Positions 38,340-59,841 of a stretch of DNA of 64,000 nucleotides are shown piece after piece. The notes under the pieces were generated by a model. That model was not told the origin of the DNA. It ran no database searches and saw only the letters and a list, made by a program, of their open reading frames with translations. Both the position numbers and the translations under genes were made by a program. The DNA lies in the IMG/VR virus record IMGVR_UViG_3300034073_003542, positions 1 to 64,000 of that record. The stretch is one strand, 5' to 3'. The first letter of the stretch is position 1. Every line of letters starts with the position of its first letter.

Positions 38340-39979
38340 TGGGAACAACAACAGAACTACAGAATGTTTTTGATTCGCCAGGAGCTTTGAAGTTTTTGGG
38401 CGCTTCTGTACTTTCTTTCAATAGCAATCTAGGAATTGGTTCTGGAAGCGAAAGTACTTTAACAGTTGAGTTAGTAGAAGACTGTGACGAAGGAGACATA
38501 TTTCAACCTAATATTGGAACTGTGGAGGTTGGATACCCAGTATATTTTGACACAACAACTGTTGGTGCAACTTTTATGTTTGGGGGTGTTTTAACAAACT
38601 GGACAAAAAATCGCTCATCAGGTGGAGATACATTCAGTGCAACAGTAACCGATCCAAGACAGTTATTACAAAATGTAAGTGTTGTTGTTGATAGTTATCT
38701 TGGTAGTCCAGTTAACGGAAATAATAACTATGTTAATGCTTATGCGTATTTTGAGGGCGATGTATTAAATGGTAATTGTGCTGTTTTTGGTGACTCATTT
38801 AGTAATGAAAGAGGAATGCCGTATGGTAAAGTTATAGAAGCATTAACAGCTATTAATCCAACAGTTTATGCTCCTACTGGTTATGGATATACAGTTAATT
38901 GGGCTTCTTTACCTGGAGGATTACCAGAATACTATAGGGTTGCTGGTCCACAAACTTTACTACAATTAATTCAAGATGTTTGTGATGCAACAGGTAATAT
39001 GTTTTATTGTTATCTTATGCCTGGAGATATTATCAACATAGGATTAATTGATCTAAAAGTCGCCCCGACATCTTTTTCTGCTATTATTGACGAATTTGAT
39101 GGATACGCTACTGAACTATCTTATGGACAAGAATTACGCAATGATGTTACTAAAGCAGTTATTTTTGGTGAATATCAACATTATTTAACATATATCAATG
39201 ACTTCAAATTTTATTTTGGTGAAGACCTGGATACTAACACCGGAGAATATTATCCAGTTGTTGGAGAAAATGGAACAAATAATCTTTTTTGGATTAATAA
39301 GAAAATCACTGATCTAAACAGTCAACTTATAGTTCCTTTTGCAAATGATGGGCCTTATGAGTTCTGTGAGCTAGAGCTTTTAGCTGCACAAGCTGGTAGA
39401 GAAATGTGGATGATGTATACTTTTTGTAATAATGCTGTTAACGGAGCTAATGAGTTTAGCGATTTAGTTAAAACTAGATATACTGATAATTCAGAAAACA
39501 TTAAGACTTTATTAAATAATCTTGTTGCTGCATATGATGCCACTCCAGATCCAGAGAAAAAAACATCGCTTGCTAAAAATTTTATTACTAGAATAAGGTC
39601 AGCTAGAGAAGCAAATGTATTACAACTAACTCAGGAAGATCAACATGATTTAGATACTATATATAATTTTGTATTAAATCTAGCAAATACATATTACGGA
39701 AAACAGTTTTTATGTCCCTTAAATGAAAAAATTTGTGGTTATTTTGGTGACGATTTTCAAGAAAAAATATTCTCTAGTGTTCCTACGAGTGCTGGTGGTT
39801 GGGTTGAGCAGAATGAGCCGTTGATAGGTTTAAGTGATCCAGATTTAGGTTTATTTAGATCAGACGATAATAGAGTTACGTCTTTTGCTTTATTTACTTT
39901 GGATGGAACAACTGAAGGAGATTCTGGCACTGATGATACTAGCGATGCTAGTCCTGGAGAAATGGGAGAGGGAGAATAA
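38339..39979 (+). CDS. Tail tip/baseplate hub-like protein
   Basis: TAATG coupling gives a start at 38339. Hub-like N-terminus (SFNSNLG...STLTVELVED...FGGVL...VTDPRQLL). Confidence 0.5.
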   Translation: MGTTTELQNVFDSPGALKFLGASVLSFNSNLGIGSGSESTLTVELVEDCDEGDIFQPNIGTVEVGYPVYFDTTTVGATFMFGGVLTNWTKNRSSGGDTFSATVTDPRQLLQNVSVVVDSYLGSPVNGNNNYVNAYAYFEGDVLNGNCAVFGDSFSNERGMPYGKVIEALTAINPTVYAPTGYGYTVNWASLPGGLPEYYRVAGPQTLLQLIQDVCDATGNMFYCYLMPGDIINIGLIDLKVAPTSFSAIIDEFDGYATELSYGQELRNDVTKAVIFGEYQHYLTYINDFKFYFGEDLDTNTGEYYPVVGENGTNNLFWINKKITDLNSQLIVPFANDGPYEFCELELLAAQAGREMWMMYTFCNNAVNGANEFSDLVKTRYTDNSENIKTLLNNLVAAYDATPDPEKKTSLAKNFITRIRSAREANVLQLTQEDQHDLDTIYNFVLNLANTYYGKQFLCPLNEKICGYFGDDFQEKIFSSVPTSAGGWVEQNEPLIGLSDPDLGLFRSDDNRVTSFALFTLDGTTEGDSGTDDTSDASPGEMGEGE

Positions 39980-42636
39980 TGCCAGATATTCAAGTACAAT
40001 GCGGTAAATTTGATCTGAATAGTGTGTCCATGGATGATGTTATCTCAACACAATCTAAAACATGGATTAAAGCAGATGTTGAAGAAAAGATTATATTTTA
40101 TGATGGTGGTGATGGAATTAGACCACATGTAGTTATTAAATTGGGTGGTCCTATTGGTGTTGGTTTTTGTGAAGATACCAAAGAACTAAATAGATCATTA
40201 GCTATGCTTTTTGCTGCTTTTTATGGTAATGATCCCGTTAGCTCTCCTGGGGGCGGAGGAGGAAGATCTCCATCAGTTTTTGTTAATCAATCAATACCAG
40301 CAGGTCTTACAACAGCTTTACGCCAGGCCGGATCAGCGATAGATAAAAATAACATCAACGTTTTGGGATTTAAAACGCCTCCATTAGTGCCCACAGAAGC
40401 TGTAGTTGCTATGAAAAGCAATGTTAGGGTTTATGGGCCTTATGCTTCTTCTAATTTTAATGTACAGGGTGGTGGTGTTAGTATAGAAACTAATCCTGAT
40501 CTTTGTCCTTGGGTATTGGGTTCCTATGCAAATATGCATGCTATGGGTAATACATTAGTTAATAGTAAGGCTGCTGGGTTATTAAAGGCAGAAAATGGTA
40601 GTGCTACAGTTCCTGGCTTACCTATGTTATTTACTCGTTTAGGAGATCAGCTTGGAGGTACTGGACCTAATGTTAGTAATGTAAGTTTTAGTTTTGGTAG
40701 TAATGGTATTTCTACTACTTATCAATTTAGTACATTTACTCCAAAATTTGGGTCATTAGCCAATAGTCAAATGGATAAACTCAAGAGTGTTGCCAAAAAT
40801 CGCCAAGAACAACTTAAGTTTTTAAGAACACAAGCAATACATCAAAATAGAATAGAAAGACAGATACGCCGAAGAAACGAATTAAACGGAGGAAATAATG
40901 GAAATGGAGCTAGGGGAGAGAACCCACACAATAAACCTACTCCACACGGCATAATAATTGGAGAAATGCTTAAATTTTCTGATACTAGTGATCCAGATTT
41001 AACTAAAGTTATTACAGACACAGTAGATGAAACTAAGACTATGATGATAGATGACTACGAAACAAGAGCATTTATGAGCTTTGACGGTCTTTTTGGTCCT
41101 GTGTCTATTAACGGGGACGGCGAGTTACCAAAATTTATCATAGCCTATACAGCAAATCATCAAAGCTCCCCAATTCAAGCACAGCCACCATTTGATTTAG
41201 GATACTGCAATACTACCGCTGCTCCAACTACACACCCACAAAATAATGTAATAGTGAATAATTCAGGACTAAATCCATTACAAGATGGTCACGTTATAGA
41301 TGTTGTGGGGCGCGAAACATCTGTGCCAGGTTCCGGTATTAACACAAGTTGTTATGATCCAGGAGATCCGTCGAGATACAGCGCAGACTATAGATTCCTT
41401 GGATTAAGAGGACCACTTGTTCTTCATGCTTGGGGATATGATGTTGACGGAAAGCCTGTTCCTAACTATATCGATACTGAGGAAGATGCAACAGATGGAG
41501 TTTTTAAAGGACAAGGCAATTATGCCGAATCAGAGGGACTCAAGGATCAATTTTTAGACAACTGGTTACAAAAACCAAAAACATGGCCTGTTGGTCCTGT
41601 TGATTTGAGATGGGATAGAGAGCGAGGAGTATGGGTTGCTCCTCAACCATTTAAAATTGTTACTGCTAGAGTGATATCAGAAGTAGCGGCTTATGGTGCT
41701 GGTGTCGGGGCTATTATTAATGATGGCATAAAACGATACGGAAGAAAACTATACAATAACGATGGCGAACCAGTAGAAGAACAAGATGTTTGTTATACTG
41801 ATACCAACGATGCTCCTGGAACAGTATGGATTTTAGTAAATGTAGGAGGATGTCCTCCAGATAGCAGTAGCAGTAGCAGTAGTAGCAGTAGTGGGGATTC
41901 TGATACTATAAGTGTTGTTACTAGTCTTGACTCATTAACTGTATCTGGTACAACCATAACACTGGGATATACAAAGAGATCAATTACAGTCCTATCTTTA
42001 GGAGCAACAACTACTGATTCTTTAGTTATTGAAGGAGATAGTTGTGCTAGTAGTAGTTCAAGTTCAAGTGGTGGAAGTTCTAGTAGTAGCGATAGTAGCA
42101 GTAGCAGTAGTAGTAGTAGTAGTGCGCCGGTTGGAGCATGTTGTATAGGCGGAGTATGTTATGATCCATATACAGAAGCAGATTGTATTGCGAACGAGGG
42201 AGTTTGGATGGGGGCTGACACAACATGTGACCCAGATCCTTGTGCTAGTAGTTCGAGCAGTAGTTCAAGTTCTAGCTCCAGTGAAGAGCCATCTAGCTCA
42301 AGTAGTGCTTCTCCTTCTGAGACTCCTATTATACGTTTAGTTGATAGAATAGGTAATAGATATCATAAGAATGCTATGGTATATGCTTATTATGATACAT
42401 ATACGCACGAATACGTAGTTTTAGAAGCAACTCATAATAATACGATGGCTTATGGATATCTATATACAAATAGCTCTGCATATATTGAAGGATGTAGTAG
42501 TGATGTTGAAAATATTATAGGCGACACTATTGAGTTTTCTAATCCTCTTGGACTAGATGTACCAACTACAGAACAAATAGAAAATGGATGTTATGCTTAT
42601 GTTATTTTGTCTAAGATGAATATTGCTGTTGTTTAA
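39979..42636 (+). CDS. Tail tip/central fibre-like protein with poly-Ser tracts and GACC Cys module
   Basis: TAATG coupling, last late gene, three poly-Ser runs (about 41863-42305), GACCIGGVC...C...C module at 42133-42243. Confidence 0.5.
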   Translation: MPDIQVQCGKFDLNSVSMDDVISTQSKTWIKADVEEKIIFYDGGDGIRPHVVIKLGGPIGVGFCEDTKELNRSLAMLFAAFYGNDPVSSPGGGGGRSPSVFVNQSIPAGLTTALRQAGSAIDKNNINVLGFKTPPLVPTEAVVAMKSNVRVYGPYASSNFNVQGGGVSIETNPDLCPWVLGSYANMHAMGNTLVNSKAAGLLKAENGSATVPGLPMLFTRLGDQLGGTGPNVSNVSFSFGSNGISTTYQFSTFTPKFGSLANSQMDKLKSVAKNRQEQLKFLRTQAIHQNRIERQIRRRNELNGGNNGNGARGENPHNKPTPHGIIIGEMLKFSDTSDPDLTKVITDTVDETKTMMIDDYETRAFMSFDGLFGPVSINGDGELPKFIIAYTANHQSSPIQAQPPFDLGYCNTTAAPTTHPQNNVIVNNSGLNPLQDGHVIDVVGRETSVPGSGINTSCYDPGDPSRYSADYRFLGLRGPLVLHAWGYDVDGKPVPNYIDTEEDATDGVFKGQGNYAESEGLKDQFLDNWLQKPKTWPVGPVDLRWDRERGVWVAPQPFKIVTARVISEVAAYGAGVGAIINDGIKRYGRKLYNNDGEPVEEQDVCYTDTNDAPGTVWILVNVGGCPPDSSSSSSSSSSGDSDTISVVTSLDSLTVSGTTITLGYTKRSITVLSLGATTTDSLVIEGDSCASSSSSSSGGSSSSSDSSSSSSSSSSAPVGACCIGGVCYDPYTEADCIANEGVWMGADTTCDPDPCASSSSSSSSSSSSEEPSSSSSASPSETPIIRLVDRIGNRYHKNAMVYAYYDTYTHEYVVLEATHNNTMAYGYLYTNSSAYIEGCSSDVENIIGDTIEFSNPLGLDVPTTEQIENGCYAYVILSKMNIAVV

Positions 42637-42638: not shown

Positions 42639-43415
42639 TTATTTGCCTTCTTCAATCATAGCTTTTTTGCTTCTCATCGCGTGTACTATATCAGGATTAA
42701 TCGATTTTCTTTTTCCTGTCATATATTCTTCAAATATCCAAGGTTTACCATCTGGTAATTTGTCTTTAAAAGATCCAATCCATTCACTGGCCCAATAATC
42801 TAAATATTGGGTATGAAAACGGCTTGTATAGTTTTTGCTAAATAAATGAGCAAATACAGATACAGCAACCTCTTCTGGTAAATTTAATCCTTTATTTTTT
42901 TGAAAATCTTTGAATAATAATGCTGTATTTTTTGCATGATCTATAAAATCTCTTTTACACATCCAAAAACCACCATTACTATTATATATAGTTTTTTGAT
43001 TAACTCCAAATTCTCTATAAAGGTTAACCATATCACTATTTTTAATTCCCCACCAATCACCCCTCTTAGTTTCTAAAGAATTTATTGGGGATTCTAGAAA
43101 AGAATGCCAAGGATCGTCACCAATAATATCTTTAAATTCGATACTAGGTTTTCTTACAAAATAATGATCACTATCAATAAAAACAAATAAATCATAATTA
43201 TATTTAGCTAATTTTTCTAAATAATAAAACTTCCAATATTGTTTAAAGTCTAGCTCTATAGATTTATCTAAATTATACGATATGCAGTTTTTTAGTTGCT
43301 TATCTGAAAAAATCATTATATCTATATCTATATCATTATTTCTTATAGAGTTAATTAAAGATTGTAGCATATAGGAGTAATCACCCCAGGCCACAGACCA
43401 TATTAAAGTTTTCAT
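42639..43415 (-). CDS. GT-A fold glycosyltransferase
   Basis: FVFIDSD (DxD), YNSNGGFW, PEE, terminal VH. Confidence 0.65.
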   Translation of the reverse strand: MKTLIWSVAWGDYSYMLQSLINSIRNNDIDIDIMIFSDKQLKNCISYNLDKSIELDFKQYWKFYYLEKLAKYNYDLFVFIDSDHYFVRKPSIEFKDIIGDDPWHSFLESPINSLETKRGDWWGIKNSDMVNLYREFGVNQKTIYNSNGGFWMCKRDFIDHAKNTALLFKDFQKNKGLNLPEEVAVSVFAHLFSKNYTSRFHTQYLDYWASEWIGSFKDKLPDGKPWIFEEYMTGKRKSINPDIVHAMRSKKAMIEEGK

Positions 43416-44446
43416 TGAGTCTCCACAAAATTTAGTAGTGAGTTAAATTTATTAATAGCAGTTTCCTTATCGCACCATACTTCTTTCGTGCAATAACTAG
43501 CACATCGCCCCATTTTATTTCTAAATCTATAATCTGATAAATCCGACATTATATCTTGTAGCTCTTCTAGATTATTCCACAAAAATCCAGTTCTTTTATC
43601 CCATATCATATTTGGGAAATTCCATATATTTGGTGCCACAACAGGACATCCTGTTAACTGGGCCTCAATAATAGCTCTACTTTGATTCTCTATAAACTTA
43701 TGATTACAGTTATATAGAAATATGTCTATTGATTGTAGAAATTCTCTGGTGTCTTTTGCATTAGGTTTTAAAAATTCCCATCTATCATCAAATTTATACC
43801 ATGAATATTTATTAGTAAGCTTTTCATCCCAACCCATTATTTTAAATTCTGAGTTTGTTTTGGCGCAAGATGATTCGTAGAATATTGGAAAATTTTCCGA
43901 GAACTTCATAGTGTCGTTTCTACTAACTTTTCCACAAACCATAGTTCTTTCTGGTCTATTCATATGTGGCCAAGAATCAGCGTCAAAATAGTTTTCTAAT
44001 ATAAATGTTTTTTGTTCTGGGTTAATTTGTTGTATTTTAGGATTTAAAATGCTTTTATGGAACTCAGAAGTAAACAAACAGCAATCCACTTTGTTTTCTG
44101 CTATAGAACTTAACTCCTCTCCACTAGTCCACATCATATCATTGGACCATAAAAATTTAAGCCCAGAGTCTTTTATAAAGTTTATTCTATTTTTTTCTTT
44201 AAATAGTCGAAAATTACAGTTTGCATAAGCATAACCCTCCAAGTTTTTAGGTAAATCTTCTAAAGAACAGTACTTTATTCCATGTAAGTCTAAAAATTCA
44301 GTATTACGCTTTTCTTTTAGCCTAAAATCATCGTTTGGAATACAGGTTATACTAAAATTATTTTTCAGTAATATCAGAAGCTCTTTGAGCCTGGTATCTG
44401 CTCCGCCTAAATCAGAAATCCATTGAAAAATGTATATATTATTCAT
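43412..44446 (-). CDS. GT-B (GT4-like) glycosyltransferase
   Basis: GGADTR N-motif; ENQSRAIIEAQLTGCPVVA (E-x7-E); TGFL. Confidence 0.8.
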   Translation of the reverse strand: MNNIYIFQWISDLGGADTRLKELLILLKNNFSITCIPNDDFRLKEKRNTEFLDLHGIKYCSLEDLPKNLEGYAYANCNFRLFKEKNRINFIKDSGLKFLWSNDMMWTSGEELSSIAENKVDCCLFTSEFHKSILNPKIQQINPEQKTFILENYFDADSWPHMNRPERTMVCGKVSRNDTMKFSENFPIFYESSCAKTNSEFKIMGWDEKLTNKYSWYKFDDRWEFLKPNAKDTREFLQSIDIFLYNCNHKFIENQSRAIIEAQLTGCPVVAPNIWNFPNMIWDKRTGFLWNNLEELQDIMSDLSDYRFRNKMGRCASYCTKEVWCDKETAINKFNSLLNFVETQ

Positions 44447-45086
44447 ATAGATTATTTTTAAATAAGATATCTATTTGAGAAAGATCGTCATAATGATTAC
44501 CAGGAACTATATTTGCGTAATGACAGTTCCAAATATCTATCATCTGAAAATCAATACTATCTAAAAAAACTAAAAGATCTTTAATTAATGGAGCATTTAG
44601 ATTATAATTAGTAATGGATGATTCAACCAGTAAATATTTAGCATTTTTAACTATATCAATACCCCCTTTTATAATATCTATTTCAGATCCTTGAGTATCT
44701 AATTTTATAAAATCAAAATTTTTATATCCTAATAAATTTGTTAAAGTATTTGTTTGTATATGATTTATAATAACATTTTCTGGACTATAAAAACTAGTAT
44801 TCTCTAAATACAAACTTGCTCCACTTGGAATTTTTTCTATTTTATTAGTATAATAAATAGTATTTTTTATACTATCTGATAATGTACTAATATAGTAATT
44901 ATTGCTTCTTTTTTTTAGTTCTGGTTCACACACACTATTAGCTTCTATCATTGTTATTTCAGATTTCGGCCAAATTTGTTTAACTATATCAAAAAAATGG
45001 CCGACACAAGCCCCTATATCTAGTATATTTTTAGGATAAAAGTTATGATTTTTTTTTAGATGCTGAATTCTTTGTAGCCAAAGCAT
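44439..45086 (-). CDS. FkbM-family SAM methyltransferase
   Basis: ILDIGACVG, IEAN, IKLDTQGSE, QIDILF. Confidence 0.85.
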   Translation of the reverse strand: MLWLQRIQHLKKNHNFYPKNILDIGACVGHFFDIVKQIWPKSEITMIEANSVCEPELKKRSNNYYISTLSDSIKNTIYYTNKIEKIPSGASLYLENTSFYSPENVIINHIQTNTLTNLLGYKNFDFIKLDTQGSEIDIIKGGIDIVKNAKYLLVESSITNYNLNAPLIKDLLVFLDSIDFQMIDIWNCHYANIVPGNHYDDLSQIDILFKNNLYE

Positions 45087-45088
45087 AG

Positions 45089-46486
45089 TTAACCCCTTAC
45101 TGGTATATTTAGTTTTCTCATAAAGTCTCGTTTTCTTTGATGTTTGTCATTTCCTTGACAGTGTAATATGTATGGTTGACTAGACTTATTATTAAAAAAT
45201 AATCTATTGTCAATAATATCAAAATATTTATCAGGAATATTATGAGTAGAAACAGATAATAGTCCTTTTTCATCAATAACTATATATTGATTTAATTCTG
45301 TAGAAAATAAACATAACTGATAATAGGTTTGATCATTAGGAGAACCCCACCCAATCGTCTTATATTCTTCAAAATTATTATACAAAAATAATACGTGATC
45401 AAATAATCTGTTAACAAAATCTTTTCTAATAGCTATTACTCCAGAGTTTAAATATCTATTTATAGATTTTGAAGTATATAATCCATTTAATTGTTTAATA
45501 GGATAACATTCTGACTCACCAGAAAAAATAATAGGCCTATTAAATGAGTTAAGAATATCTAAAATTTCTACTTCATTAAAGTTTCTTAATATTAAAGAGT
45601 CATTAGAGTCTAAAACTATAACCCAATCATAATTATTTTCATTAATTTTTAAAAATTCATAAACTTTTTCTATTTTAGCATGGATATAGTGCTTCATACA
45701 TTCTCCTCTACCCAAATAATTGATATTCCAATTAGTGTTTATTTCCATTGAAGCCTCTAAATCTCTTATTATTTCATTACTGTTAGAAAATGCTGGCGAT
45801 ACTACTATTATTTTTTTGAATTCTTTTTGACGTATCATATATTCCTCTTTTACTAGTTTAATTGGATGTTTTATGTTGCCGTTTGAGTTACAGTTTTGAA
45901 ATGGCTGAATGCTATTTTTGTCAACTGATTTAATGTTGGCCCCAATTATATTGGCGCATGTAGATAGTCTTAATTCATTCATTTGATTACGCCATAAATT
46001 ATTTTCTTTTTTCATATATTCTAAACTACTTAATAAAACATCACCTTGTATCAAAATACCACAAAACGGAGTAATTCCAAGTAATTTAGTTTTATATTTG
46101 CGATACAGTTCTGTATTTTTTTTAGCGTGATTAAACCATTGCCATGATTGGTTAGATTGCTCTGTATGTATTTGTGTTCCAGAAATATCATCATTCCACA
46201 CTTTTTCAAAATATTTATCAACAGATTCTAAACACAGAGTATCCCAATCAAACCAACAATATCTTTTAGCTTTGATAAAATTATTACTTTCTATCCAATT
46301 ATATATCATAGTATCATTATACATCCACATATTATCATAGTTCCAAAGATTAGATTTTGGCGAAGATTCTGGTGTTAATGGAACTATTTTATAGTGAGGA
46401 TTATGTTTTTCAAACATCTTCAAATGATAATTAGTGACTGTATCATCTTTATGATGCAGAAATAAAATAACACATTCTTCAATCAT
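45089..46486 (-). CDS. Two-domain glycosyltransferase: DWD/NELR domain plus PLOD (procollagen lysyl hydroxylase)-type GT domain
   Basis: N-half WFDWDTL...NELRLST. C-half VLDSND, IIFSGESECYP, YLNSG, NDQ, LHCQG. Confidence 0.65.
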   Translation of the reverse strand: MIEECVILFLHHKDDTVTNYHLKMFEKHNPHYKIVPLTPESSPKSNLWNYDNMWMYNDTMIYNWIESNNFIKAKRYCWFDWDTLCLESVDKYFEKVWNDDISGTQIHTEQSNQSWQWFNHAKKNTELYRKYKTKLLGITPFCGILIQGDVLLSSLEYMKKENNLWRNQMNELRLSTCANIIGANIKSVDKNSIQPFQNCNSNGNIKHPIKLVKEEYMIRQKEFKKIIVVSPAFSNSNEIIRDLEASMEINTNWNINYLGRGECMKHYIHAKIEKVYEFLKINENNYDWVIVLDSNDSLILRNFNEVEILDILNSFNRPIIFSGESECYPIKQLNGLYTSKSINRYLNSGVIAIRKDFVNRLFDHVLFLYNNFEEYKTIGWGSPNDQTYYQLCLFSTELNQYIVIDEKGLLSVSTHNIPDKYFDIIDNRLFFNNKSSQPYILHCQGNDKHQRKRDFMRKLNIPVRG

Positions 46487-47154
46487 AGTATCTTATTTTC
46501 AACTCCATGATATATTCCTGGTTCCGCTAAAGGTATTATATTATCAAATCTAACATAGGGCAAGTTAATCTCTCCCACTCTAGCTCCCTCTAAATGGGCT
46601 ATGGTAGGAAGCCTTAATTCGTTCTGAATAGATCGCTCATAAACCTCATCCCATCGCTCATTTAAAATACTACCCAGTACATGCCGCCTACATAAATAAA
46701 ACCCCATAGAAACCAACCCAACGCCTTCCTGGGCCGCATTAAGCCCCATAAGTTGTGTTTCGGGCCACCACCACCAATTATCTGGTGTCCAAGTAGGATC
46801 AGCCATACGTTTGCGTTGCCATTTTCCCCTAATCTTAATATTCTCCCTATAACAGAATCTTGAAGCTAGATCCAAATGATCGGGTAATTGGGGTAAGGGT
46901 TGGGTGATAAGAGTATCCCATTCGATAATAGCTACAATATCGTTATCAATTTTGCTAAAATTTTCTTTTAGCCATAATCTTAGTTGTTGATCGCTATTTT
47001 TCCAATCATAATATTTACCTCTACCAGAATCTTTACCGACAATGATATGAATTTGGGTGTTGGGATTAGATTTTTGAAGATGGTGCAGATGAGGGAGTTT
47101 GGGGGCATTTTGGATGGGATCGATATAAGTCATTAACAAGACAGTTTGGGACAT
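46483..47154 (-). CDS. Putative glycosyltransferase (EWD/NELR family)
   Basis: IIEWDTL and QNELRLPT motifs shared with neighbours. Confidence 0.5.
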   Translation of the reverse strand: MSQTVLLMTYIDPIQNAPKLPHLHHLQKSNPNTQIHIIVGKDSGRGKYYDWKNSDQQLRLWLKENFSKIDNDIVAIIEWDTLITQPLPQLPDHLDLASRFCYRENIKIRGKWQRKRMADPTWTPDNWWWWPETQLMGLNAAQEGVGLVSMGFYLCRRHVLGSILNERWDEVYERSIQNELRLPTIAHLEGARVGEINLPYVRFDNIIPLAEPGIYHGVENKIL

Positions 47155-47155
47155 T

Positions 47156-47716
47156 TTATTTCATTTCATAGTTAAGTAATTCAAAATCTTTTTGATAAAA
47201 ATTATTAATCAGTTCTATTGTAACATTATCTAAATCCACTATATTTAGAATTTTGGTATTACTAATTTTTTGTTTAATGTTGAGTTTAATGTTCAGTCCG
47301 TATTGACTCATAAGATTATTGAAGTCTATATCAATATTTTCATAGCGTAATATGTGTGTTGTGCTTATATTGCTTATATATTTATATTGTTCATAGTAAT
47401 GGTATTCTTTTTTATGTTGTGAGAGTATATTTTGTCTAATTATTTTATTAAAATCTTTTTTAGAGACAGTTTTATTGTATGGAGGTATACCAAAAAAATA
47501 AAATTCAGATATTATTCTATCATAAGGATTTCTAACAACCGTAAACCAATCATACTTAGATTGCACCAATTGTTCTATTTCTATTAATGGTTGATGCCAA
47601 TGTATCCCATATTCTTTATGAAATCTGCCCCAGGCTAAATTCATTTGTTTTTTTGCACAGGTTTCTATAGAAGTGCCGCTTGTTCTGGTTATGTGGGCGA
47701 ATTTCAGTTCTTTCAT
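47156..47716 (-). CDS. Sulfotransferase (Sulfotransfer_2-like)
   Basis: FAHITRTSGTSIE (5'-PAPS loop), VVRNPYDRIISEF (3'-PB motif), LRYENI. Confidence 0.8.
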   Translation of the reverse strand: MKELKFAHITRTSGTSIETCAKKQMNLAWGRFHKEYGIHWHQPLIEIEQLVQSKYDWFTVVRNPYDRIISEFYFFGIPPYNKTVSKKDFNKIIRQNILSQHKKEYHYYEQYKYISNISTTHILRYENIDIDFNNLMSQYGLNIKLNIKQKISNTKILNIVDLDNVTIELINNFYQKDFELLNYEMK

Positions 47717-48360
47717 TTTTTGAAATATTTTTGGATTGCTTGTTGTCTAGATATTTTATGGTCTTTTTCTCTCATTAATGCGTATGGTTGCGGCAATTCC
47801 ATAAAAGCCCCATAATATGATGCAGGAATAATCTTGCTTGTTAGTTTACTAGATAGGATAATATCATCTTCTATTCTATAGTTGTTAGCTTTTTGTTCAT
47901 TAATCCAGTCAACACGGCCCACATTTTCTTTTGTTGTTATAATAAACCTACCTTTAATAATATCAACTTCTTGATCTTTCATTGGGTGCGGAGCGATATG
48001 TTTAGATCTCCAATAGTCTAAATTACTATTTAGCTGAACGCCCGTATATCCAAGAGCTTCATACTTACAATTCTCTATAAAATTAATAGATCTCTCTAAT
48101 AAATCTGGCCTAGTAATCATAAGGTCGTCATCTAGACTAAAAACATATTTGGTATCCGCAAAAGCCCCCATTAACCATCTAGGCGAACACATTAAATTCC
48201 GCCCACTATTTATCTGCATATCTGCATCAAATTTAGTAATGTCTTGTATATTATTGTTCCATACAAAAATTGTGACTGGTATACTTTGTTGGCGTAAACC
48301 AGTAATGATTCTGATTAGATTATACGGGCGTTTCCAGTTAAGTAGAAGGGCTGTTATCAC
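47713..48360 (-). CDS. GT-A glycosyltransferase (GT2/GT64-like)
   Basis: LLNWKRP, VWNN, FSLDDD, EDDIILS. Confidence 0.7.
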   Translation of the reverse strand: MITALLLNWKRPYNLIRIITGLRQQSIPVTIFVWNNNIQDITKFDADMQINSGRNLMCSPRWLMGAFADTKYVFSLDDDLMITRPDLLERSINFIENCKYEALGYTGVQLNSNLDYWRSKHIAPHPMKDQEVDIIKGRFIITTKENVGRVDWINEQKANNYRIEDDIILSSKLTSKIIPASYYGAFMELPQPYALMREKDHKISRQQAIQKYFKK

Positions 48361-49210
48361 TGTCTTTATCTCGATTTTTCTTAGCTGATTTAATCGCTCT
48401 ATTTAATATTATTTTAGCTATAGTTTTAGAGAAGATTAATTTACGTTTTGTGGCTTCTTCTTCTAGCCATCCTATGATAGTGTCTTTGTTTGACTCACAC
48501 CACTCTATTCCATTTTTATCCATTATTTTTGCTTTTTTTTTGCATGAGCAATTTGGCGTGGATTTAATTCCAAAAGCTTCTAGTGTTTTAGAAAGTTCTG
48601 TTCCCACTCCACCAACTAATTTACTTAGATCTTGTTTTTGTGAAGATATTTTTTGTGAATTATTTATAAGAGTAGGTAATTTTATCTCACCAATTTTTGC
48701 TCCACATAATAAAGCAACTGTAGCAAATCTCAGTTCGTTTTGTATTGTTTTTTTATAAACGTTATCATATTTAGGATCACATATAGCATCTAACACCCAC
48801 CTTCTTACTATATAAAATCCAAAACTACTTATACCAATAGGTTCTTTATCTCCTAATATTGAAGATAATTGATTTGCTTCTCTCCACCATACCCACTTTG
48901 GATTAGCTTCTATAGTTTGAACAACTTTTCCTGCTAAATCTAGATTGCCTGGCAGTTTAGGTAAGTCACCATTGACAATTTTTTTGTATTCTGTAATATA
49001 GATAATTTCATCTTTAATATGTTGTTTATTTTCTAGCCACCAATCTCTTAGTTCTCTATCGCTATTTTTCCAATTTCCTGATAAACTTCTTTTTTCGCAT
49101 TCAACGACAACAATTTCTTGAGTTTTGTAATATTTGTCTCGCATACCATAATGGAGAGATATAATTTCTGTATCTATTAAATTTTTAGGAACTTGTATTA
49201 ATAGGCTCAT
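48338..49210 (-). CDS. Degenerate EWD/NELR GT-like domain fused to a GVGTEL..CSC..WC domain
   Basis: WKNSDRELRDW and QNELRFAT shared with 46483..47154; the acidic motif reads EYK. ATG 49210 preferred. Confidence 0.5.
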   Translation of the reverse strand: MSLLIQVPKNLIDTEIISLHYGMRDKYYKTQEIVVVECEKRSLSGNWKNSDRELRDWWLENKQHIKDEIIYITEYKKIVNGDLPKLPGNLDLAGKVVQTIEANPKWVWWREANQLSSILGDKEPIGISSFGFYIVRRWVLDAICDPKYDNVYKKTIQNELRFATVALLCGAKIGEIKLPTLINNSQKISSQKQDLSKLVGGVGTELSKTLEAFGIKSTPNCSCKKKAKIMDKNGIEWCESNKDTIIGWLEEEATKRKLIFSKTIAKIILNRAIKSAKKNRDKDSDNSPST

Positions 49211-49520
49211 ATTTTGAATACCATGAATCAACTAAATTTTGAAAAGAATCCTGTATATTTATTCCTAAGATCTCAAGGATTTTATTTTGAACATCATCCT
49301 GCGAATAATTCCCAATTTCATCATACTCATAATCTCTCCATAATACTATATGATCAGATAACATATTTGTAAAACGAACAATAACTATTTTTTTGCCTGG
49401 ATCGTCTATAGTAATATATGGTATATTGATGAATTTTTTTGTTTTGGAGGGTATAGGTGTTCCATTTGGAGCAATCACTGCTGGAAAATTAATTGTTATA
49501 GGTTCGCTGAATTGCAACAT
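49185..49520 (-). CDS. Small hypothetical protein
   Basis: AAAGGAA RBS, directly downstream of a sigma70-type promoter. Confidence 0.6.
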   Translation of the reverse strand: MLQFSEPITINFPAVIAPNGTPIPSKTKKFINIPYITIDDPGKKIVIVRFTNMLSDHIVLWRDYEYDEIGNYSQDDVQNKILEILGINIQDSFQNLVDSWYSKYEPINTSS

Positions 49521-49557
49521 AAAATTCCTTTCATTTGTGCTGGTGTTCCGTTGTCTT

Positions 49558-49586
49558 ATTATAGGTTATCTCACAGAGAGGTGCAA
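49558..49586 (-). promoter_or_regulatory. Sigma70-type promoter TTGCAC-N17-TATAAT facing the glycan cluster
   Basis: -35 at 49586-49581, -10 at 49563-49558, 17-nt spacer, intergenic. Confidence 0.7.
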
Positions 49587-49590
49587 GAAA

Positions 49591-50256
49591 ATGAAAGAGT
49601 GTGCTCTTATTTTAACGCGATCTAATAATAGTTATGTTGATTATTTGTCTAAAAATCTAGAATTAGATTCATATATAATATCTGATACAGATATAAGTGA
49701 TGAGAGTGCCATTAGTCGAAACTTTATTAATGCGACATCTAAAAAATTAAAGAACCCTAATAGTTGGGATAAAAGTTTTTTGTTTATCCAAGATAATAGT
49801 CTACTTAATAAGTACGACAATATTTGGTTTTTGGAAGATGATGTATATTCAAGAAATATAAAAATCATTAATTCCTTTATATCTAAAGTTTCTAAAGAAA
49901 ATTATGATTTATGTTACTATAAACATTGGTATTTTAATACAGCTCCAATTTGGGTTAAGGATACTATATTTCTGAAAGATTTTGTACAAAATGGATTCTA
50001 TCAATCATATAATCAATTTTCTAGACTATCCAATAGACTAGTAAATCAAATATTCAACATACATCAATCCTATAATTCTTTATTTTTTCACGAATATATG
50101 TTTCCTAATTTAGCTAGATATCAGGGATACAAAATATTACAATTTGTTGATCAAATCCAATATAGAAATTTTTTTGGAAAATTTTATTGTGGTAGATCAA
50201 TACCTAAACAAAATATCCAAACAGATAAAATATATCATCCTGTTAAGGACAGGTAG
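49591..50256 (+). CDS. Putative glycosyltransferase-like protein (lone + strand gene)
   Basis: GAGAGG RBS before ATG 49591; SWDK, WFLEDDV and FHEYMFP motifs. Confidence 0.55.
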   Translation: MKECALILTRSNNSYVDYLSKNLELDSYIISDTDISDESAISRNFINATSKKLKNPNSWDKSFLFIQDNSLLNKYDNIWFLEDDVYSRNIKIINSFISKVSKENYDLCYYKHWYFNTAPIWVKDTIFLKDFVQNGFYQSYNQFSRLSNRLVNQIFNIHQSYNSLFFHEYMFPNLARYQGYKILQFVDQIQYRNFFGKFYCGRSIPKQNIQTDKIYHPVKDR

Positions 50257-51070
50257 TTGGAGTGGCACTAAAAGAGATATTCCAGGTAGCTGTTGAATCA
50301 GAGCTATAGGCCAGAAGACACGATTCTCTATTGTCGCAGTCGCATTGTATAAGCGGGTCTATAGGTTCATCACAGTATGGGTAAGTAGCCTCCTGCCACT
50401 CATTATCAATAGAACTATCTCCAGACGAAGAATAAGAATTAGTATGATTACCATAAGTTATATTTGTAGATATCCCACAAGAAGTACTATACCCCGTCCC
50501 ACCAGGATAAGTTAAACCATCAGCACTACACGTAACACACAAACTACCAGTAAAATAAATGCCAATAGTCATGCAATATCCCATTCCGCCGTATTCTGTG
50601 CCACACTGAAAATCTCCATCACAAGTAGTTGGGGGGTTGCCAGCACCTATTGCTTCAACATTATTAGGATCCCAAAATATATTAGTAGAGCTAACAGGAG
50701 TACCGTCAATATCGTCAATGTTCCATGTTACAAATGTTTGATTGCCAGAAACCTCAAAGGTTCCAGAAAACGAACCCGCAGCCGCAAAAGTCTGAGTATC
50801 TGTCCCATCAGCATCAATACATTGATTTGGACAACCAGTAAGATAATCATTTACTGTCCAAGGAAATCCGTCGCACACAGTCCCAGTATATCCAGTCGCA
50901 CAACAAGGATCTGATCTATTAAATTCGTAATCTAGGCTCCATGTACAAGTAAAATCATAACATCCATCACTATAATTAGTGCATGGGTGATCGCAACAAC
51001 AATCTGTGCTAGTTGCTATCTTACCATCCCTGATAAGAATTTTTCCATTATGAATAATTATTGGAGACAT
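50243..51070 (-). CDS. Cys/Thr/Gly-rich acidic protein, possibly virion-associated
   Basis: N-terminal DCCCDHPC and many further Cys; composition like the tail-tip proteins. Confidence 0.5.
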   Translation of the reverse strand: MSPIIIHNGKILIRDGKIATSTDCCCDHPCTNYSDGCYDFTCTWSLDYEFNRSDPCCATGYTGTVCDGFPWTVNDYLTGCPNQCIDADGTDTQTFAAAGSFSGTFEVSGNQTFVTWNIDDIDGTPVSSTNIFWDPNNVEAIGAGNPPTTCDGDFQCGTEYGGMGYCMTIGIYFTGSLCVTCSADGLTYPGGTGYSTSCGISTNITYGNHTNSYSSSGDSSIDNEWQEATYPYCDEPIDPLIQCDCDNRESCLLAYSSDSTATWNISFSATPTTCP

Positions 51071-51409
51071 TTAATCTTTCTCTTCTGTTCCAGGAATATA
51101 TTTATGCCATCCCTTATTTTTGAGATAGTTCCCTTCTTTGTCTTTACGTTTAGGAAATAGGGTTCCATTCTTCTTATGTTGACCAAAAGCTAGAATAGCC
51201 CCACAACCAGGACTTTGACAACGTAATTCGTAGTAATCATTATCATCAACATTTCTTACTACAAATCTTATATGATCCTTATTACACATTCCACAATGTG
51301 TTTCACCAAATATTTCCTGGATAACAGCTAATTCCTTAAAAACCTCTTTTTGTCCGCTTCCTTCGAGTTCAAACTCCAATTTGTCAGCAATTTTATACTT
51401 CAATTTCAT
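51071..51409 (-). CDS. Zinc-ribbon protein
   Basis: CGMC and CQSPGC pairs; GAGG RBS before ATG 51409. Confidence 0.6.
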   Translation of the reverse strand: MKLKYKIADKLEFELEGSGQKEVFKELAVIQEIFGETHCGMCNKDHIRFVVRNVDDNDYYELRCQSPGCGAILAFGQHKKNGTLFPKRKDKEGNYLKNKGWHKYIPGTEEKD

Positions 51410-51464
51410 CGTACACCTCAACTTCTTGTGTTATTGCCAACCTTTGCGAAGCTTTACAAAAGCA

Positions 51465-52202: not shown

Positions 52203-52226
52203 TTAATATCTCCTATTTCTTAGTTT

Positions 52227-53391: not shown

Positions 53392-53393
53392 TA

Positions 53394-54005: not shown

Positions 54006-54007
54006 AT

Positions 54008-57627: not shown

Positions 57628-57655
57628 TATCTTCAGAGTCTTTCTAGTTATTTAA

Positions 57656-59834: not shown

Positions 59835-59841
59835 CTATATT

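What the first reader, a model, noticed from the sequence alone, without database searches (positions are those of the whole stretch)
42639..50256. Dense glycan-tailoring island with eukaryote-type families, behind a host-type promoter
Seen: about eight GT-like domains (GT-A, GT4, PLOD-type, GT2/GT64-like, EWD/NELR types), an FkbM methyltransferase and a PAPS-dependent sulfotransferase in 7.6 kb. A TTGCAC-N17-TATAAT promoter at 49586-49558 faces them. No nucleotide-sugar synthesis or export genes are visible. Inference: the island builds a methylated/sulfated oligosaccharide from host precursors. A sigma70-type promoter suggests early expression, so the target could be the host envelope (receptor masking) rather than, or as well as, the virion.
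Basis: partly seen in the sequence, partly recalled or inferred. Interest (0 to 1): 0.6.

Follow-up and report, generated by a model that had tools for sequence, protein, structure and literature searches.

The report
Phage glycan-building island beside poly-serine virion proteins
A 210-kb uncultured phage carries a tightly packed, intact set of sugar-adding, methylating and sulfating enzymes next to its tail genes, and these most likely coat serine-rich stretches of its own particle proteins with a complex glycan rather than remodelling the host surface.

Summary
Positions 42639-50256 encode ten intact genes with eight glycosyltransferase-like domains. They include a GT6-like GT-A, a GT4-like GT-B, a PLOD-type domain, a GT2/GT64-like domain, a DUF707/DUF3405-like domain and three copies of a Pfam-less "EWD/NELR" GT-A family. 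An FkbM methyltransferase and a sulfotransferase with intact PAPS motifs are also present.

The promoter claim does not hold. TTGCAC-N17-TATAAT exists in the only intergenic gap, but it is one of 15 equally good matches in the island. The phage's real host-type promoters (about 60 copies of cTTGACA-N16/17-TATAAT) all lie elsewhere.

"Host precursors only" is half right. The genome encodes RmlC, RmlD and at least five more GTs at 112-128 kb.

The best reading is O-glycosylation of poly-serine tracts in virion proteins.
- The only three poly-Ser proteins of the genome are structural, and one abuts the island.
- A GT71-like gene and a second FkbM gene sit inside the structural operon.
- The conserved g2-g1 pair co-occurs with poly-Ser proteins in several unrelated phage lineages (10 of 19 versus 0 of 69 control loci) and in Verrucomicrobiota and Planctomycetota genomes.
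- No membrane glycan machinery and no DNA-base hydroxymethylation genes were found.

This target assignment is inferred, not shown.

The parts
42639..43415 (-). g1: 258-aa GT-A glycosyltransferase with a GT6-like fold and an invariant DSD motif (residues 81-83). It is the conserved partner of g2.
   Evidence: No Pfam hit. AF2 model has pLDDT 95. All top Foldseek PDB hits are GT6 enzymes (GTA/GTB, alpha3GalT, BoGT6a; E about 2e-7, TM 0.5-0.6). There are 248 homologues, the 120 listed being 58-85% identical.
43412..44446 (-). g2: 344-aa GT-B (GT4-like) glycosyltransferase with an EX7E motif (residues 253-261). It always sits directly upstream of g1.
   Evidence: Pfam Glyco_trans_1_4 at 7.8e-9, above cut-off. 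EX7E motif. The g2-g1 pair is found in 25 IMG/VR loci and in PVC bacterial genomes.
44439..45086 (-). g3: FkbM-family SAM methyltransferase, a likely sugar O-methyltransferase. It is the first gene of the variable cassette.
   Evidence: Pfam Methyltransf_21 at 1.6e-10, full length. TIGR01444 at 2.4e-11, above cut-off. DNA homology to relatives stops at 44446-44448.
45089..46486 (-). g4: 465-aa two-domain glycosyltransferase. The N-half (about 45827-46486) belongs to the EWD/NELR GT-A family (DWDT, NELRLST). The C-half is a PLOD-type GT with a DSND (DxxD) motif.
   Evidence: Pfam PLOD GT at 2.3e-7, above cut-off; DUF6492 only weak. N-half versus the g5 family: hhalign probability 94.9%, E 4e-8. 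Motifs.
46483..47154 (-). g5: 223-aa GT-A fold enzyme of a family without a Pfam model (motifs EWDT and QNELRxPT).
   Evidence: 23 further homologues (besides the window's own cluster), none with a Pfam domain. AF2 pLDDT 93. Foldseek gives GT-A enzymes (BoGT6a, B3GNT2, LgtC, Mimivirus R699, STIV A197).
47156..47716 (-). g6: 186-aa PAPS-dependent sulfotransferase with 5'-PSB (TRTSGTS) and 3'-PB (RNPYDRIIS) motifs.
   Evidence: Pfam Sulfotransfer_2 at 2.5e-7, above cut-off. phrog_3347 'Galactose-3-O-sulfotransferase' at 4e-13. Sequence.
47713..48360 (-). g7: 215-aa GT-A, GT2/GT64-like, with a DDD motif (residues 77-79).
   Evidence: Pfam GT64 at 0.021, below cut-off. Atlas features score 0.99 to GT2/GT64 clusters. 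Motif. It co-occurs with g5 homologues in L138-L142.
48338..49231 (-). g8: paralogue of g5 (37% identity) plus a C-terminal Cys-containing extension. EYK replaces EWD, so it may be non-catalytic. The start is probably ATG 49210.
   Evidence: blastp 4e-33 to g5. Alignment A1. Sequence.
49185..49520 (-). g9: 111-aa protein of unknown function, the first gene of the - strand run.
   Evidence: No hit in Pfam, PHROGs or NCBIfam.
49558..49586 (-). Candidate promoter TTGCAC-N17-TATAAT in the 70-nt divergent gap 49521-49590.
   Evidence: Sequence. The -35 matches 3/6 and the site is not listed by the scanner. It does not match the phage's own cTTGACA-N16/17-(TGn)TATAAT consensus.
49591..50256 (+). g10: 221-aa GT-A-like protein (DUF707/DUF3405-type) with an EDD motif. 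It is the only + strand gene of the island.
   Evidence: Atlas structure TM 0.79 and features 0.98 to 'glycosyltransferase' clusters, mostly from Nucleocytoviricota and Uroviricota. Start and sequence.
50243..51070 (-). 275-aa Cys-rich (22 Cys), Ser/Thr-rich protein. It is the right-hand member of the variable cassette; function unknown.
   Evidence: No family hit. DNA homology with L007 resumes only at about 51100.
39979..42636 (+). 885-aa distal tail protein, convergent with g1. Poly-Ser tracts (residues 629-638, 690-715, 757-775) flank a Cys-rich module. Proposed glycan acceptor.
   Evidence: Orthologues in L003 and L007 carry 25-52-residue Ser tracts at the same place.
6812..9376 (+). 854-aa structural-module protein with an (SSSSSTSG)n tract (residues 184-251), an SG/E-rich linker and an FGE-sulfatase (lectin-like) domain. 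Proposed glycan acceptor.
9376..11088 (+). 570-aa structural-module protein ending in a poly-Ser tail. Proposed glycan acceptor.
12556..13869 (+). GT71-like mannosyltransferase (Mannosyl_trans3, DAD motif) inside the structural operon.
   Evidence: Pfam 6.7e-34. Motif.
13873..14490 (+). Second FkbM methyltransferase, inside the structural operon.
   Evidence: Pfam Methyltransf_21 at 1.9e-13, with weak RfbT similarity.
54760..57627 (-). GT-B glycosyltransferase interrupted by an intein with a LAGLIDADG endonuclease. It is part of the conserved frame to the right of the cassette.
   Evidence: phrog_2170 at 1e-18. Intein_splicing, LAGLIDADG_3 and Glycos_transf_1. The L007 homologue lacks about 1.2 kb here.

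Best explanation
The island is a virion-glycosylation locus of a lytic 210-kb siphophage. All of its enzymes are soluble and would act in the infected cell's cytoplasm.

The conserved pair would work first. g2 is a GT4-like GT-B enzyme and g1 is a GT6-like retaining GT-A enzyme. Together they would start and first extend O-linked glycans on the long poly-serine tracts of virion proteins. The candidate acceptors are the 885-aa tail protein next to g1 and the 854-aa and 570-aa proteins of the head-proximal module.

The swappable cassette (g3-g10) would then lengthen and cap the chain. It holds a PLOD-type domain, a GT2/64-like domain, a DUF707-like domain and three EWD/NELR GT-A domains. The FkbM enzyme would add O-methyl groups and g6 would add sulfate from host PAPS.

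Other phage glyco-genes belong to the same programme. They are the GT71-like and FkbM genes in the structural operon, the intein-bearing GT-B, and the RmlC/RmlD/GT2 cluster at 112-128 kb. Sugar donors are partly host-made (UDP-sugars, PAPS) and partly finished by the phage (a dTDP-6-deoxyhexose through RmlC/RmlD).

Shown: gene content, folds, motifs, synteny, co-occurrence, and the absences listed. Inferred: the acceptor, the order of steps, the sugars, and the timing of expression.
For: - Eight GT-like domains, a methyltransferase and a sulfotransferase have intact catalytic or cofactor motifs, and the genes are arranged for translational coupling.
- The island is convergent with, and directly abuts, the tail module that follows a 5102-aa tape-measure gene (PhageMin_Tail 1e-28).
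- Only 3 of 315 ORFs in the genome carry poly-Ser tracts. All three are in the + strand structural module, and one is the neighbour of g1.
- A GT71-like gene and a second FkbM gene lie inside the structural operon.
- g2-g1 is an invariant adjacent pair in 25 IMG/VR loci of otherwise unrelated phages.
- 10 of 19 distinct contig types have a poly-Ser ORF within 10 kb of the pair, and 2 more have one elsewhere on the contig.
- None of 69 ThyX-anchored control loci without the pair (1.06 Mb) has one. Fisher p = 2e-8, without correction for relatedness.
- The same pair, in the same order, occurs in Verrucomicrobiota and Planctomycetota genomes. There it sits beside RHS-repeat proteins that begin with Cys/poly-Ser segments, or beside a 511-aa poly-Ser protein.
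- Close relatives keep the tail-g1-g2 frame and the right-hand frame but exchange the genes between them. One relative carries UDP-galactopyranose mutase plus a methyltransferase; another carries Gly_transf_sug plus DUF5672. This is the pattern expected for a surface-exposed glycan.
- No island protein has a membrane segment. The genome has no polytopic membrane protein and no Bac_transf.
- Precedents exist: mycobacteriophage capsid and tail-tube glycosylation (PMC12363180, PMC12619734 citing Freeman 2023) and giant-virus glycogene clusters with GTs, methyltransferases and sulfate-metabolism genes (PMC9614988).
Against: - No glycan or glycoprotein has been observed. The phage is uncultured and only DNA runs hold it.
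- Poly-Ser tracts could be plain flexible linkers.
- The co-occurrence test is not phylogenetically independent. Seven of the positive contig types (L005/6/9, L010, L011, L012, L013, L023 and their like) are one lineage, and half of the pair-bearing loci show no poly-Ser ORF within 10 kb.
- In some phages g2-g1 sits next to ThyX and an HldE-like sugar-nucleotide enzyme. In some bacteria it sits next to C39-ABC exporters. Other acceptors are therefore possible.
- The island is on the strand of the replication genes, not of the structural genes. It carries neither the early consensus promoter nor the GGTGTATA motif seen before structural genes.
- The two predicted folds (g1, g5) give fold class, not specificity.
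Confidence: 0.5

Rival explanations
1. The soluble GTs act on host lipid-linked or cell-wall glycans (O-antigen, capsule, teichoic-acid-like polymers or S-layer glycans). This changes the receptor, blocks superinfection, or stops progeny from sticking to debris.
For: - Peripheral GTs of LPS and capsule pathways are also soluble GT-A and GT-B enzymes, and FkbM-type methyltransferases cap O-antigens (weak RfbT similarity of the second FkbM).
- The island is on the same strand as the replication genes.
- A promoter-like string sits in its only intergenic gap.
- RmlC and RmlD are typical of O-antigen sugar supply.
Against: - No initiating phosphoglycosyltransferase (Bac_transf absent).
- No polytopic membrane protein anywhere in 315 ORFs, so no Gtr-, Wzx-, Wzy- or ligase-like part.
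- The island lacks the phage's consensus host-type promoter.
- Fifteen or more GT domains far exceed known seroconversion modules.
- Seroconversion is typical of temperate phages, and no lysogeny signal was noticed.
- This reading does not explain the link between g2-g1 and poly-Ser proteins.
Confidence: 0.15
2. DNA hypermodification. At least the conserved g2-g1 pair glycosylates a modified base in phage DNA to evade restriction, as T4 and the 5hmC-glycan clusters of metagenomic phages do.
For: - Phage GT clusters that put mono- to trisaccharides (hexose, HexNAc, heptose) on 5hmC are widespread and can lie near structural genes (bioRxiv 10.1101/2023.12.21.572611).
- In one phage lineage g2-g1 lies next to ThyX and a PfkB/CTP_transf_like (HldE-like) gene.
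Against: - The genome has no ThyA-family hydroxymethylase and no C5 cytosine methyltransferase.
- It gave no TET/JBP hit, but that search's control was silent, so this point is inconclusive.
- Methylated or sulfated DNA glycans are unknown.
- Eight or more GT domains exceed any known DNA glycan.
- The bacterial homologues sit by RHS proteins and exporters, not by DNA-modification genes.
Confidence: 0.08
3. The island is a collection of horizontally acquired, low-GC morons with no common product. Its genes act on different or no substrates, and some are decaying.
For: - GC content is 24-34% for nine of the ten island genes (g5 is 39%) against 35% for the genome.
- The cassette content differs in every relative.
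- g8 has lost a motif Asp.
- Sub-modules (g7+g5, g6+g5) travel separately in other phages.
Against: - All ten ORFs are intact and tightly coupled, with 1-8-nt overlaps or gaps for most.
- Catalytic motifs are kept in 7 of 8 GT domains and in the methyltransferase and sulfotransferase.
- The island is 100% identical in a second IMG/VR contig and in four runs of the one study that holds it.
- g1 and g2 are under strong conservation.
Confidence: 0.1

Closest known systems
Mycobacteriophage virion glycosylation (Che8, Corndog, Myrna; Freeman et al. 2023, as summarised in PMC12363180 and PMC12619734)
   Same: Phage-encoded soluble glycosyltransferases, encoded near structural genes, modify the phage's own capsid and tail proteins in the cytoplasm.
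   Different: - Those phages carry one to a few GTs; here there are at least 15 GT domains plus two FkbM methyltransferases and a sulfotransferase.
- The proposed acceptors here are long poly-Ser tracts in tail and decoration proteins, not the C-termini of capsid and tail-tube subunits.
- No sequence relationship was established.
- Glycosylation here is not demonstrated.
Giant-virus glycogene clusters (chlorovirus PBCV-1 A064R/A061L; Megavirinae fibril clusters) (PMC9614988)
   Same: - Multi-domain GT-A enzymes are combined with sugar methyltransferases.
- Rhamnose-pathway enzymes are present.
- Some clusters include sulfate-metabolism genes.
- PLOD-type GT domains occur (Mimivirus L230).
- Cluster content varies between clades.
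- The glycan ends up on the particle.
   Different: - Those are eukaryote-infecting Nucleocytoviricota; this is a tailed phage.
- A sulfotransferase itself is present here, but no SAT/APS kinase.
- No lysyl hydroxylase domain and no collagen-like repeats are present.
Serine-rich-repeat adhesin glycosylation in Gram-positive cocci (GtfA/GtfB then GT-A enzymes such as GT8-type extenders); from established knowledge
   Same: A cytoplasmic GT4-type GT-B enzyme starts O-glycosylation on long Ser-rich repeats. GT-A enzymes encoded beside it then extend the glycan. The enzyme genes are encoded next to the substrate gene.
   Different: - No GtfB-like partner or accessory Sec system was seen.
- g2 gives only a generic GT4 hit.
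- g1 resembles GT6 rather than GT8.
- The link to the substrate is by co-occurrence only.
CAZy family GT6 (ABO transferases, alpha-1,3-GalT, Bacteroides BoGT6a)
   Same: The g1 model's best structural matches are all GT6 enzymes. It has a GT-A fold with a DXD-type motif (DSD).
   Different: - Identity is 10-15% and TM only 0.5-0.6.
- There is no hit to any Pfam GT family at E up to 5.
- A profile search of PDB sequences finds nothing.
- This is fold-level resemblance, not family membership.
Phage seroconversion modules (Gtr systems, O-antigen acetyl/glucosyl modification); from established knowledge
   Same: Phage-encoded sugar transferases that change a surface glycan.
   Different: Those systems need membrane proteins (flippase, bactoprenol GT, serotype-specific GT). 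None is present here.

Membership tests
GT-A fold nucleotide-sugar transferases (g1, g5; by homology g4N and g8) | Rossmann-like GT-A fold | tested here: met
   AF2 pLDDT 95 and 93. Foldseek PDB probability 1.0, and top hits are all GT-A enzymes. g4N versus the g5 family: hhalign 94.9%.
GT-A fold nucleotide-sugar transferases (g1, g5, g7, g10, g4C, g8) | DXD-type metal/nucleotide-binding motif | tested here: met
   g1 DSD is invariant. g5 has EWD, g4N DWD, g4C DSND, g7 DDD and g10 EDD. It is not met in g8 (EYK).
CAZy GT6 (g1) | Sequence membership (Pfam Glyco_transf_6 or significant similarity to GT6 enzymes) | tested here: not met
   No Pfam hit at E up to 5. The PDB profile search is empty. 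There is only structural similarity at 10-15% identity.
GT4-type GT-B (g2) | Glycos_transf_1 / Glyco_trans_1_4 domain above threshold and an EX7E motif | tested here: met
   36.4 bits against a cut-off of 27. ENQSRAIIE at residues 253-261.
FkbM methyltransferases (g3; also 13873-14490) | Full-length Methyltransf_21 / TIGR01444 match above cut-off | tested here: met
PAPS-dependent sulfotransferases, Sulfotransfer_2 (g6) | Domain above cut-off plus the 5'-PSB and 3'-PB PAPS-binding motifs | tested here: met
   31.6 bits against a cut-off of 22. TRTSGTS and RNPYDRIIS are read in the sequence. Motif identity rests on established knowledge of the family; activity was not tested.
PLOD / collagen lysyl-hydroxylase-glycosyltransferases (g4 C-half) | PLOD GT domain | tested here: met
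   30.7 bits against a cut-off of 27.
PLOD / collagen lysyl-hydroxylase-glycosyltransferases (g4 C-half) | Linked lysyl hydroxylase domain and a collagen-like (GXY)n substrate | tested here: not met
   No 2OG-oxygenase domain in g4. No (GXY)5 or longer repeat in any of 315 ORFs.
GT64 (g7) | Pfam Glyco_transf_64 above gathering score | tested here: not met
   14.6 bits against a cut-off of 21.3. Only language-model features point to GT2/GT64 clusters.
Host sigma-70-type promoter as used by this phage | Match to the phage's own recurrent consensus cTTGACA-N16/17-(TGn)TATAAT | tested here: not met
   The -35 is TTGCAC (3/6) and there is no TG. About 60 consensus sites lie elsewhere and none at 12.5-58 kb; the window's only two are a weaker in-gene match at 12404 and the site at 58200.
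Host sigma-70-type promoter as used by this phage | Transcription start or early expression | not testable with these tools
   No RNA run holds the sequence.
Phage virion glycosylation systems | GT genes within or next to the structural module | tested here: met
   The island abuts the tail genes. GT71-like and FkbM genes lie inside the structural operon.
Phage virion glycosylation systems | Glycan detected on virion proteins | not testable with these tools
   Uncultured phage; this needs MS or glycostaining.
Seroconversion / envelope glycan modification systems | Membrane components (initiating PGT, flippase, polymerase, or GtrABC) | tested here: not met
   No Bac_transf. No ORF has more than 3 hydrophobic segments.
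Phage DNA glycosylation systems | A pathway to a hydroxymethylated base (ThyA-type hydroxymethylase, or C5-MT plus TET/JBP) | tested here: not met
   PF00303 and PF00145 are absent, with positive controls. PF12851 is absent, but its control was silent, so that one is inconclusive.

The most novel reading that the evidence does not exclude
The g2-g1 pair (a GT4-like GT-B plus a GT6-like GT-A) is the core of a previously unrecognised, dedicated poly-serine O-glycosylation system. It is shared by many aquatic and subsurface phages and by Verrucomicrobiota and Planctomycetota, where it would modify RHS-type and other secreted proteins. In this phage it primes a mucin-like, methylated and sulfated glycan coat on tail and decoration proteins. 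The composition of that coat is re-shuffled between relatives through a swappable enzyme cassette, which includes a GT-A family (EWD/NELR) that no Pfam model covers.
Probability: 0.3. Interest if true: 0.8.

Novelty: new variant of a known kind. Interest (0 to 1): 0.62.

Why it matters
Virus-encoded glycosylation of the virus's own particle is well documented for giant viruses and for a few mycobacteriophages, but it is barely explored in environmental phages.

This locus offers three things. It is a compact, testable system with a two-gene conserved core and an obvious candidate acceptor (poly-Ser tracts). It may be the first phage case of a sulfated glycan. It also contains an unannotated GT-A family.

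If the poly-Ser link is real, it gives a simple sequence rule for finding glycosylated virion proteins in metagenomes. It also links phage particle coats to an uncharacterised protein-glycosylation system of PVC bacteria.

Finally, the case shows that the 'host-type promoter' argument can be checked against a phage's own promoter consensus.

Tried and rejected
- Megablast of the island against 50,697 phage records gave no match. tblastn with the polymerase found only relatives below 35% identity, so no cultured relative exists.
- A profile of the g1 family against PDB sequences gave nothing; the fold search was needed.
- Single-protein locus search with g4 found only the same phage.
- The 'moraphage' paper (PMC12619734) was read as a possible description of this lineage. 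It was rejected because those phages have PolB and contractile tails and no detected tape measure.
No global background rate was obtained, and a ThyX-anchored control set was used instead.
- An 18-codon uninterrupted S/T pattern proved too strict: it missed a known positive contig, so its negatives are uninformative. The single hit could equally encode poly-(Asp-Glu).
- No RNA run holds the sequence, so expression and timing are untested.
- Read laying showed only identical contigs from one study. Contigs break at the poly-Ser repeats and at 44688-44715, and there are no variants.
- Collagen-like substrates for the PLOD-type domain were sought and not found.
- One search was a mistyped reference.
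- The large representative search was not used, since family scans and word searches settled the main proteins. g9 and the g8 C-terminal extension remain unassigned.
- No other genetic code was used.

Full report
CONTEXT. The window is the first 64 kb of a 209,847-bp IMG/VR virus record. CheckV rates it 100% complete. It has 35% GC, 25 tRNA genes and about 315 ORFs. It comes from subsurface metagenomes. Four DNA runs of one study hold it and no RNA run does. No cultured phage is close.

Positions 1-42636 (+ strand) form the structural module. It contains a major head protein (phrog_2522), a 5102-aa tape-measure protein (PhageMin_Tail 1e-28) and four large distal tail proteins. From 42639 leftward transcription takes over. 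First comes the island, then a conserved frame (50243-57627), then SSB, a split DnaE with a DnaQ-like exonuclease, and a PD-(D/E)XK nuclease.

CHECK OF THE OBSERVATION. The island holds nine abutting or overlapping - strand genes (g1-g9, 42639-49520). It also holds one + strand gene, g10, whose real start is most likely ATG 49591 rather than the upstream TTG.
- Pfam places four domains above their curated cut-offs: g2 Glyco_trans_1_4, g3 FkbM, g4 C-half PLOD GT, and g6 Sulfotransfer_2. PHROGs calls g6 a galactose-3-O-sulfotransferase.
- The proteins without Pfam hits were resolved by other means.
- g1: the model has pLDDT 95, and every top PDB match is a GT6 enzyme. Its DSD motif is invariant among the 27 aligned homologues.
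- g5: the model has pLDDT 93 and a GT-A fold.
- g8 is a 37%-identical paralogue of g5.
- The g4 N-half belongs to the same family (hhalign 94.9%).
- g7 groups with GT2/GT64 clusters by features, but its Pfam GT64 score is below cut-off.
- g10 matches DUF707/DUF3405-type 'glycosyltransferase' clusters, mostly from giant viruses and phages (TM 0.79).
- Metal-binding or EX7E motifs are intact in seven of the eight GT domains. g8 has EYK in place of EWD. The sulfotransferase keeps both PAPS-binding motifs.
- g9 (111 aa) is unassigned.
The count of about eight GT-like domains plus a methyltransferase and a sulfotransferase is therefore right, and the genes are not decayed. A second IMG/VR contig is 100% identical over 32642-56486.

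THE PROMOTER. TTGCAC-N17-TATAAT is present at 49586-49558(-) in the 70-nt gap between the divergent genes g9 and g10. By sequence it is unremarkable.
- The -35 matches 3 of 6 positions.
- Promoter-like sites in the region are at chance level (67 versus 58.7 +/- 7.4).
- Of 24 TATAAT hexamers inside the island, 15 have an equal or better -35.

The phage displays its own host-type promoter class very clearly. About 60 sites read cTTGACA-N16/17-(TGn)TATAAT, and 28 of them are perfect in both hexamers. Almost all are on the - strand at 129-210 kb, among small genes and tRNAs. A few lie at 58-127 kb, the nearest at 58200 in front of SSB, which is followed by a terminator-like hairpin. Apart from a weaker in-gene match at 12404, none lies in 1-58 kb.

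A second recurrent motif, tGGTGTATAa, precedes structural genes (2958, 6215, 16100, 19116) and some middle genes. The genome also encodes a sigma-70 region-4 protein. The island carries neither motif. The host does use Shine-Dalgarno sites and sigma-70-type promoters, so a weak promoter in the gap is possible. 'Host-type promoter, hence early' is not supported. Timing cannot be tested here.

SUPPLY OF PRECURSORS. The window indeed lacks sugar-nucleotide genes. At 112-128 kb, however, the genome encodes RmlC (4e-45) and RmlD (1e-36), a B12-radical-SAM enzyme, three GT2 genes, a Glyco_trans_1_2 and a GT1_4. The window itself holds two further glyco-genes inside the structural operon: a GT71-like Mannosyl_trans3 (6.7e-34) and a second FkbM. 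It also holds an intein-bearing GT-B. The genome thus has at least 15 GT domains. APS kinase is absent, so PAPS must be the host's.

WHAT THE TARGET IS. Three candidates were weighed.

(a) Host envelope. No island protein has a membrane segment. No ORF in the genome has more than three hydrophobic segments, and Bac_transf is absent. The membrane parts that define seroconversion or O-antigen and capsule assembly are therefore missing.

(b) DNA. No ThyA-type hydroxymethylase and no C5 methyltransferase are present. The TET/JBP search was negative, but its control was silent. Known DNA glycans are mono- to trisaccharides without methyl or sulfate (10.1101/2023.12.21.572611).

(c) Virion proteins. 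Only three of 315 ORFs carry poly-serine tracts, and all three are structural-module proteins.
- The 885-aa tail protein that abuts g1 has Ser runs flanking a small Cys-rich module.
- The 854-aa protein has (SSSSSTSG)n and a lectin-like FGE-sulfatase domain.
- The 570-aa protein ends in poly-Ser.
- The orthologous tail protein in two relatives has 25-52-residue Ser tracts at the same place.

THE CONSERVED PAIR AND THE VARIABLE CASSETTE. The 120 listed homologues of g1 are 58-85% identical to it. In 25 IMG/VR loci g2 always lies directly upstream of g1, while the rest of each locus is unrelated.

Close relatives (L003, L007) keep the tape measure, the four tail genes, g1 and g2, and the right-hand frame. 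The genes between them differ. One relative has UDP-galactopyranose mutase plus a methyltransferase and two unknown genes; the other has Gly_transf_sug plus DUF5672. DNA similarity stops at 44446-44448 and resumes near 51100. So g3-g10 and the Cys-rich gene form a swappable cassette. It has low GC: 24-34% for seven of its eight island genes (g5 is 39%), while the flanking Cys-rich gene is 40%.

Sub-modules recur elsewhere. g7 and g5 occur together in five loci, and in one phage a g5 homologue is flanked by four sulfotransferase paralogues.

CO-OCCURRENCE TEST. With one fixed criterion, 10 of 19 distinct pair-bearing contig types have a poly-Ser ORF within 10 kb of g2-g1. Two more have long poly-Ser ORFs elsewhere on the contig. 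Of 80 ThyX-anchored viral loci (1.28 Mb), the 69 without the pair have none, and 4 of the 11 with the pair have one. Fisher p is 2e-8. This figure overstates independence, because several positives are one lineage. At least five phage lineages contribute.

Bacterial genomes give an independent view. The same g2-g1 pair, at 31-38% identity and in the same order, is found almost only in Verrucomicrobiota and Planctomycetota MAGs. In five of those loci it sits beside a protein with Ser runs. Four are large proteins that begin with Cys/poly-Ser segments: one has RHS repeats at 1.8e-15, and another shares its N-terminal region. The fifth is a 511-aa poly-Ser protein in Schlesneria. In other loci it lies by C39-peptidase ABC exporters.

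MECHANISM PROPOSED. Everything in this paragraph is inferred.
- g2, a GT4-like GT-B, starts O-glycosylation of Ser tracts in the cytoplasm. This resembles what GtfA does on serine-rich-repeat adhesins.
- g1, a GT6-like and probably retaining GT-A, adds the next sugar.
- The cassette GTs extend and branch the chain.
- FkbM and the sulfotransferase cap it with methyl and sulfate.
- RmlC and RmlD supply a 6-deoxyhexose.
- The product decorates tail and decoration proteins.
The nearest architectural analogues are giant-virus glycogene clusters (PMC9614988) and mycobacteriophage virion glycosylation (PMC12363180). I put this at about 0.5. The rivals are host-envelope modification (0.15), an unrelated moron collection (0.10) and DNA glycosylation (0.08). 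The remainder goes to acceptors not considered.

'EUKARYOTE-TYPE' FAMILIES. The labels are real as best matches: GT6 fold, PLOD GT, Sulfotransfer_2, GT71, DUF707/DUF3405. Membership fails for GT6 and GT64, and for PLOD as an enzyme, since there is no hydroxylase and no collagen-like substrate. The homologues found are mostly from phages, giant viruses and PVC bacteria. The label therefore describes annotation history more than origin.

LIMITS. There are no expression data, no chemistry and no host. Structures were predicted only for g1 and g5. It showed identical contigs in four runs of one study, with contig breaks at the Ser-coding repeats and at 44688-44715.

Noticed in passing
window 19652-34960 (+): This is a single 5102-aa ORF with a PhageMin_Tail domain (1e-28). 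Relatives have 4622-5490-aa versions. By the usual rule of about 1.5 A per residue, this tape-measure protein implies a tail of roughly 0.7-0.8 um.
   Followed up: partly
window 54760-57627 (-): A GT-B glycosyltransferase is interrupted by an intein of about 400 aa with a LAGLIDADG homing endonuclease. The L007 homologue lacks the insert. Inteins usually sit in replication or packaging genes, so one in a glycosyltransferase is unusual.
   Followed up: partly
window 58197-62592 (-): DNA polymerase III alpha (DnaE) is encoded as two ORFs (60697-62592 and 58197-59834). An RNase_T/DnaQ-like exonuclease gene (59842-60528) lies between them.
   Followed up: partly
genome 129-210 kb, mostly - strand (outside the window); also 58200, 78522, 99707, 110149, 115847: There are about 60 near-perfect promoters of the form cTTGACA-N16/17-(TGn)TATAAT. 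They are dense among small genes and the tRNA cluster and look like the early class read by host RNA polymerase.
   Followed up: yes
window 2958, 6215, 16100, 19116 (+); genome 94799, 96388, 127968, 132314, 139783, 174765 (-): A recurrent motif tGGTGTATAa lies upstream of structural and some middle genes. It may be a late or middle promoter, read with the phage's sigma-70 region-4 protein (genome 115117-115803).
   Followed up: partly
genome 112-128 kb (locus L034): A second glyco cluster holds GT1_4, three GT2 genes, Glyco_trans_1_2, RmlC, RmlD and a B12-radical-SAM enzyme. Nearby are a Volactin (actin-like) gene, an IMPDH/GMP-reductase gene and a GIY-YIG endonuclease.
   Followed up: partly
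loci L146, L154, L155, L158, L159 (Verrucomicrobiota and Planctomycetota MAGs): Bacterial g2-g1 pairs sit beside large proteins, RHS-repeat type where a family hit was obtained. Their N-termini carry Cys-rich and poly-Ser segments like those of the phage proteins. Other copies sit beside C39-peptidase ABC exporters (L149, L156, L157, L161).
   Followed up: partly
locus L144 7336-13294: In another viral contig the g5-family GT is flanked by four sulfotransferase paralogues, which suggests heavily sulfated phage glycans elsewhere.
   Followed up: no
loci L005, L009, L011, L012, L013, L023 (about 3-4.7 kb in each): This is a family of 300-670-aa phage proteins. Each has a Cys-rich N-terminus (MPNCCGPFKRG...), Ser tracts of up to about 100 residues in Ser-rich regions of several hundred, interspersed Cys modules and a basic C-terminus. 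Each is encoded about 5 kb from g2-g1.
   Followed up: partly
window 6812-9376 (+), residues 359-504: An FGE-sulfatase (sulfatase-modifying-factor-like, C-type-lectin-like) domain lies in a poly-Ser structural protein of a phage that also encodes a sulfotransferase. This is probably a binding module, and the coincidence was not explored.
   Followed up: no
window 52277-53065 (-): An HNH homing-endonuclease-like gene sits inside the conserved frame. It is also present in relative L007 at 62% identity.
   Followed up: no
window 57655-57680 (-): A terminator-like hairpin (GCCCCGAAAGGGGC followed by a T-run) lies directly after the SSB gene. Transcripts from the 58200 promoter may therefore not reach the island.
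   Followed up: no
window 44658-44722: Public-run contigs break here, inside the FkbM gene. Several unrelated contigs share this short stretch at 85-90% identity, which makes it an assembly-graph branch point. Both IMG/VR assemblies bridge it.
   Followed up: partly
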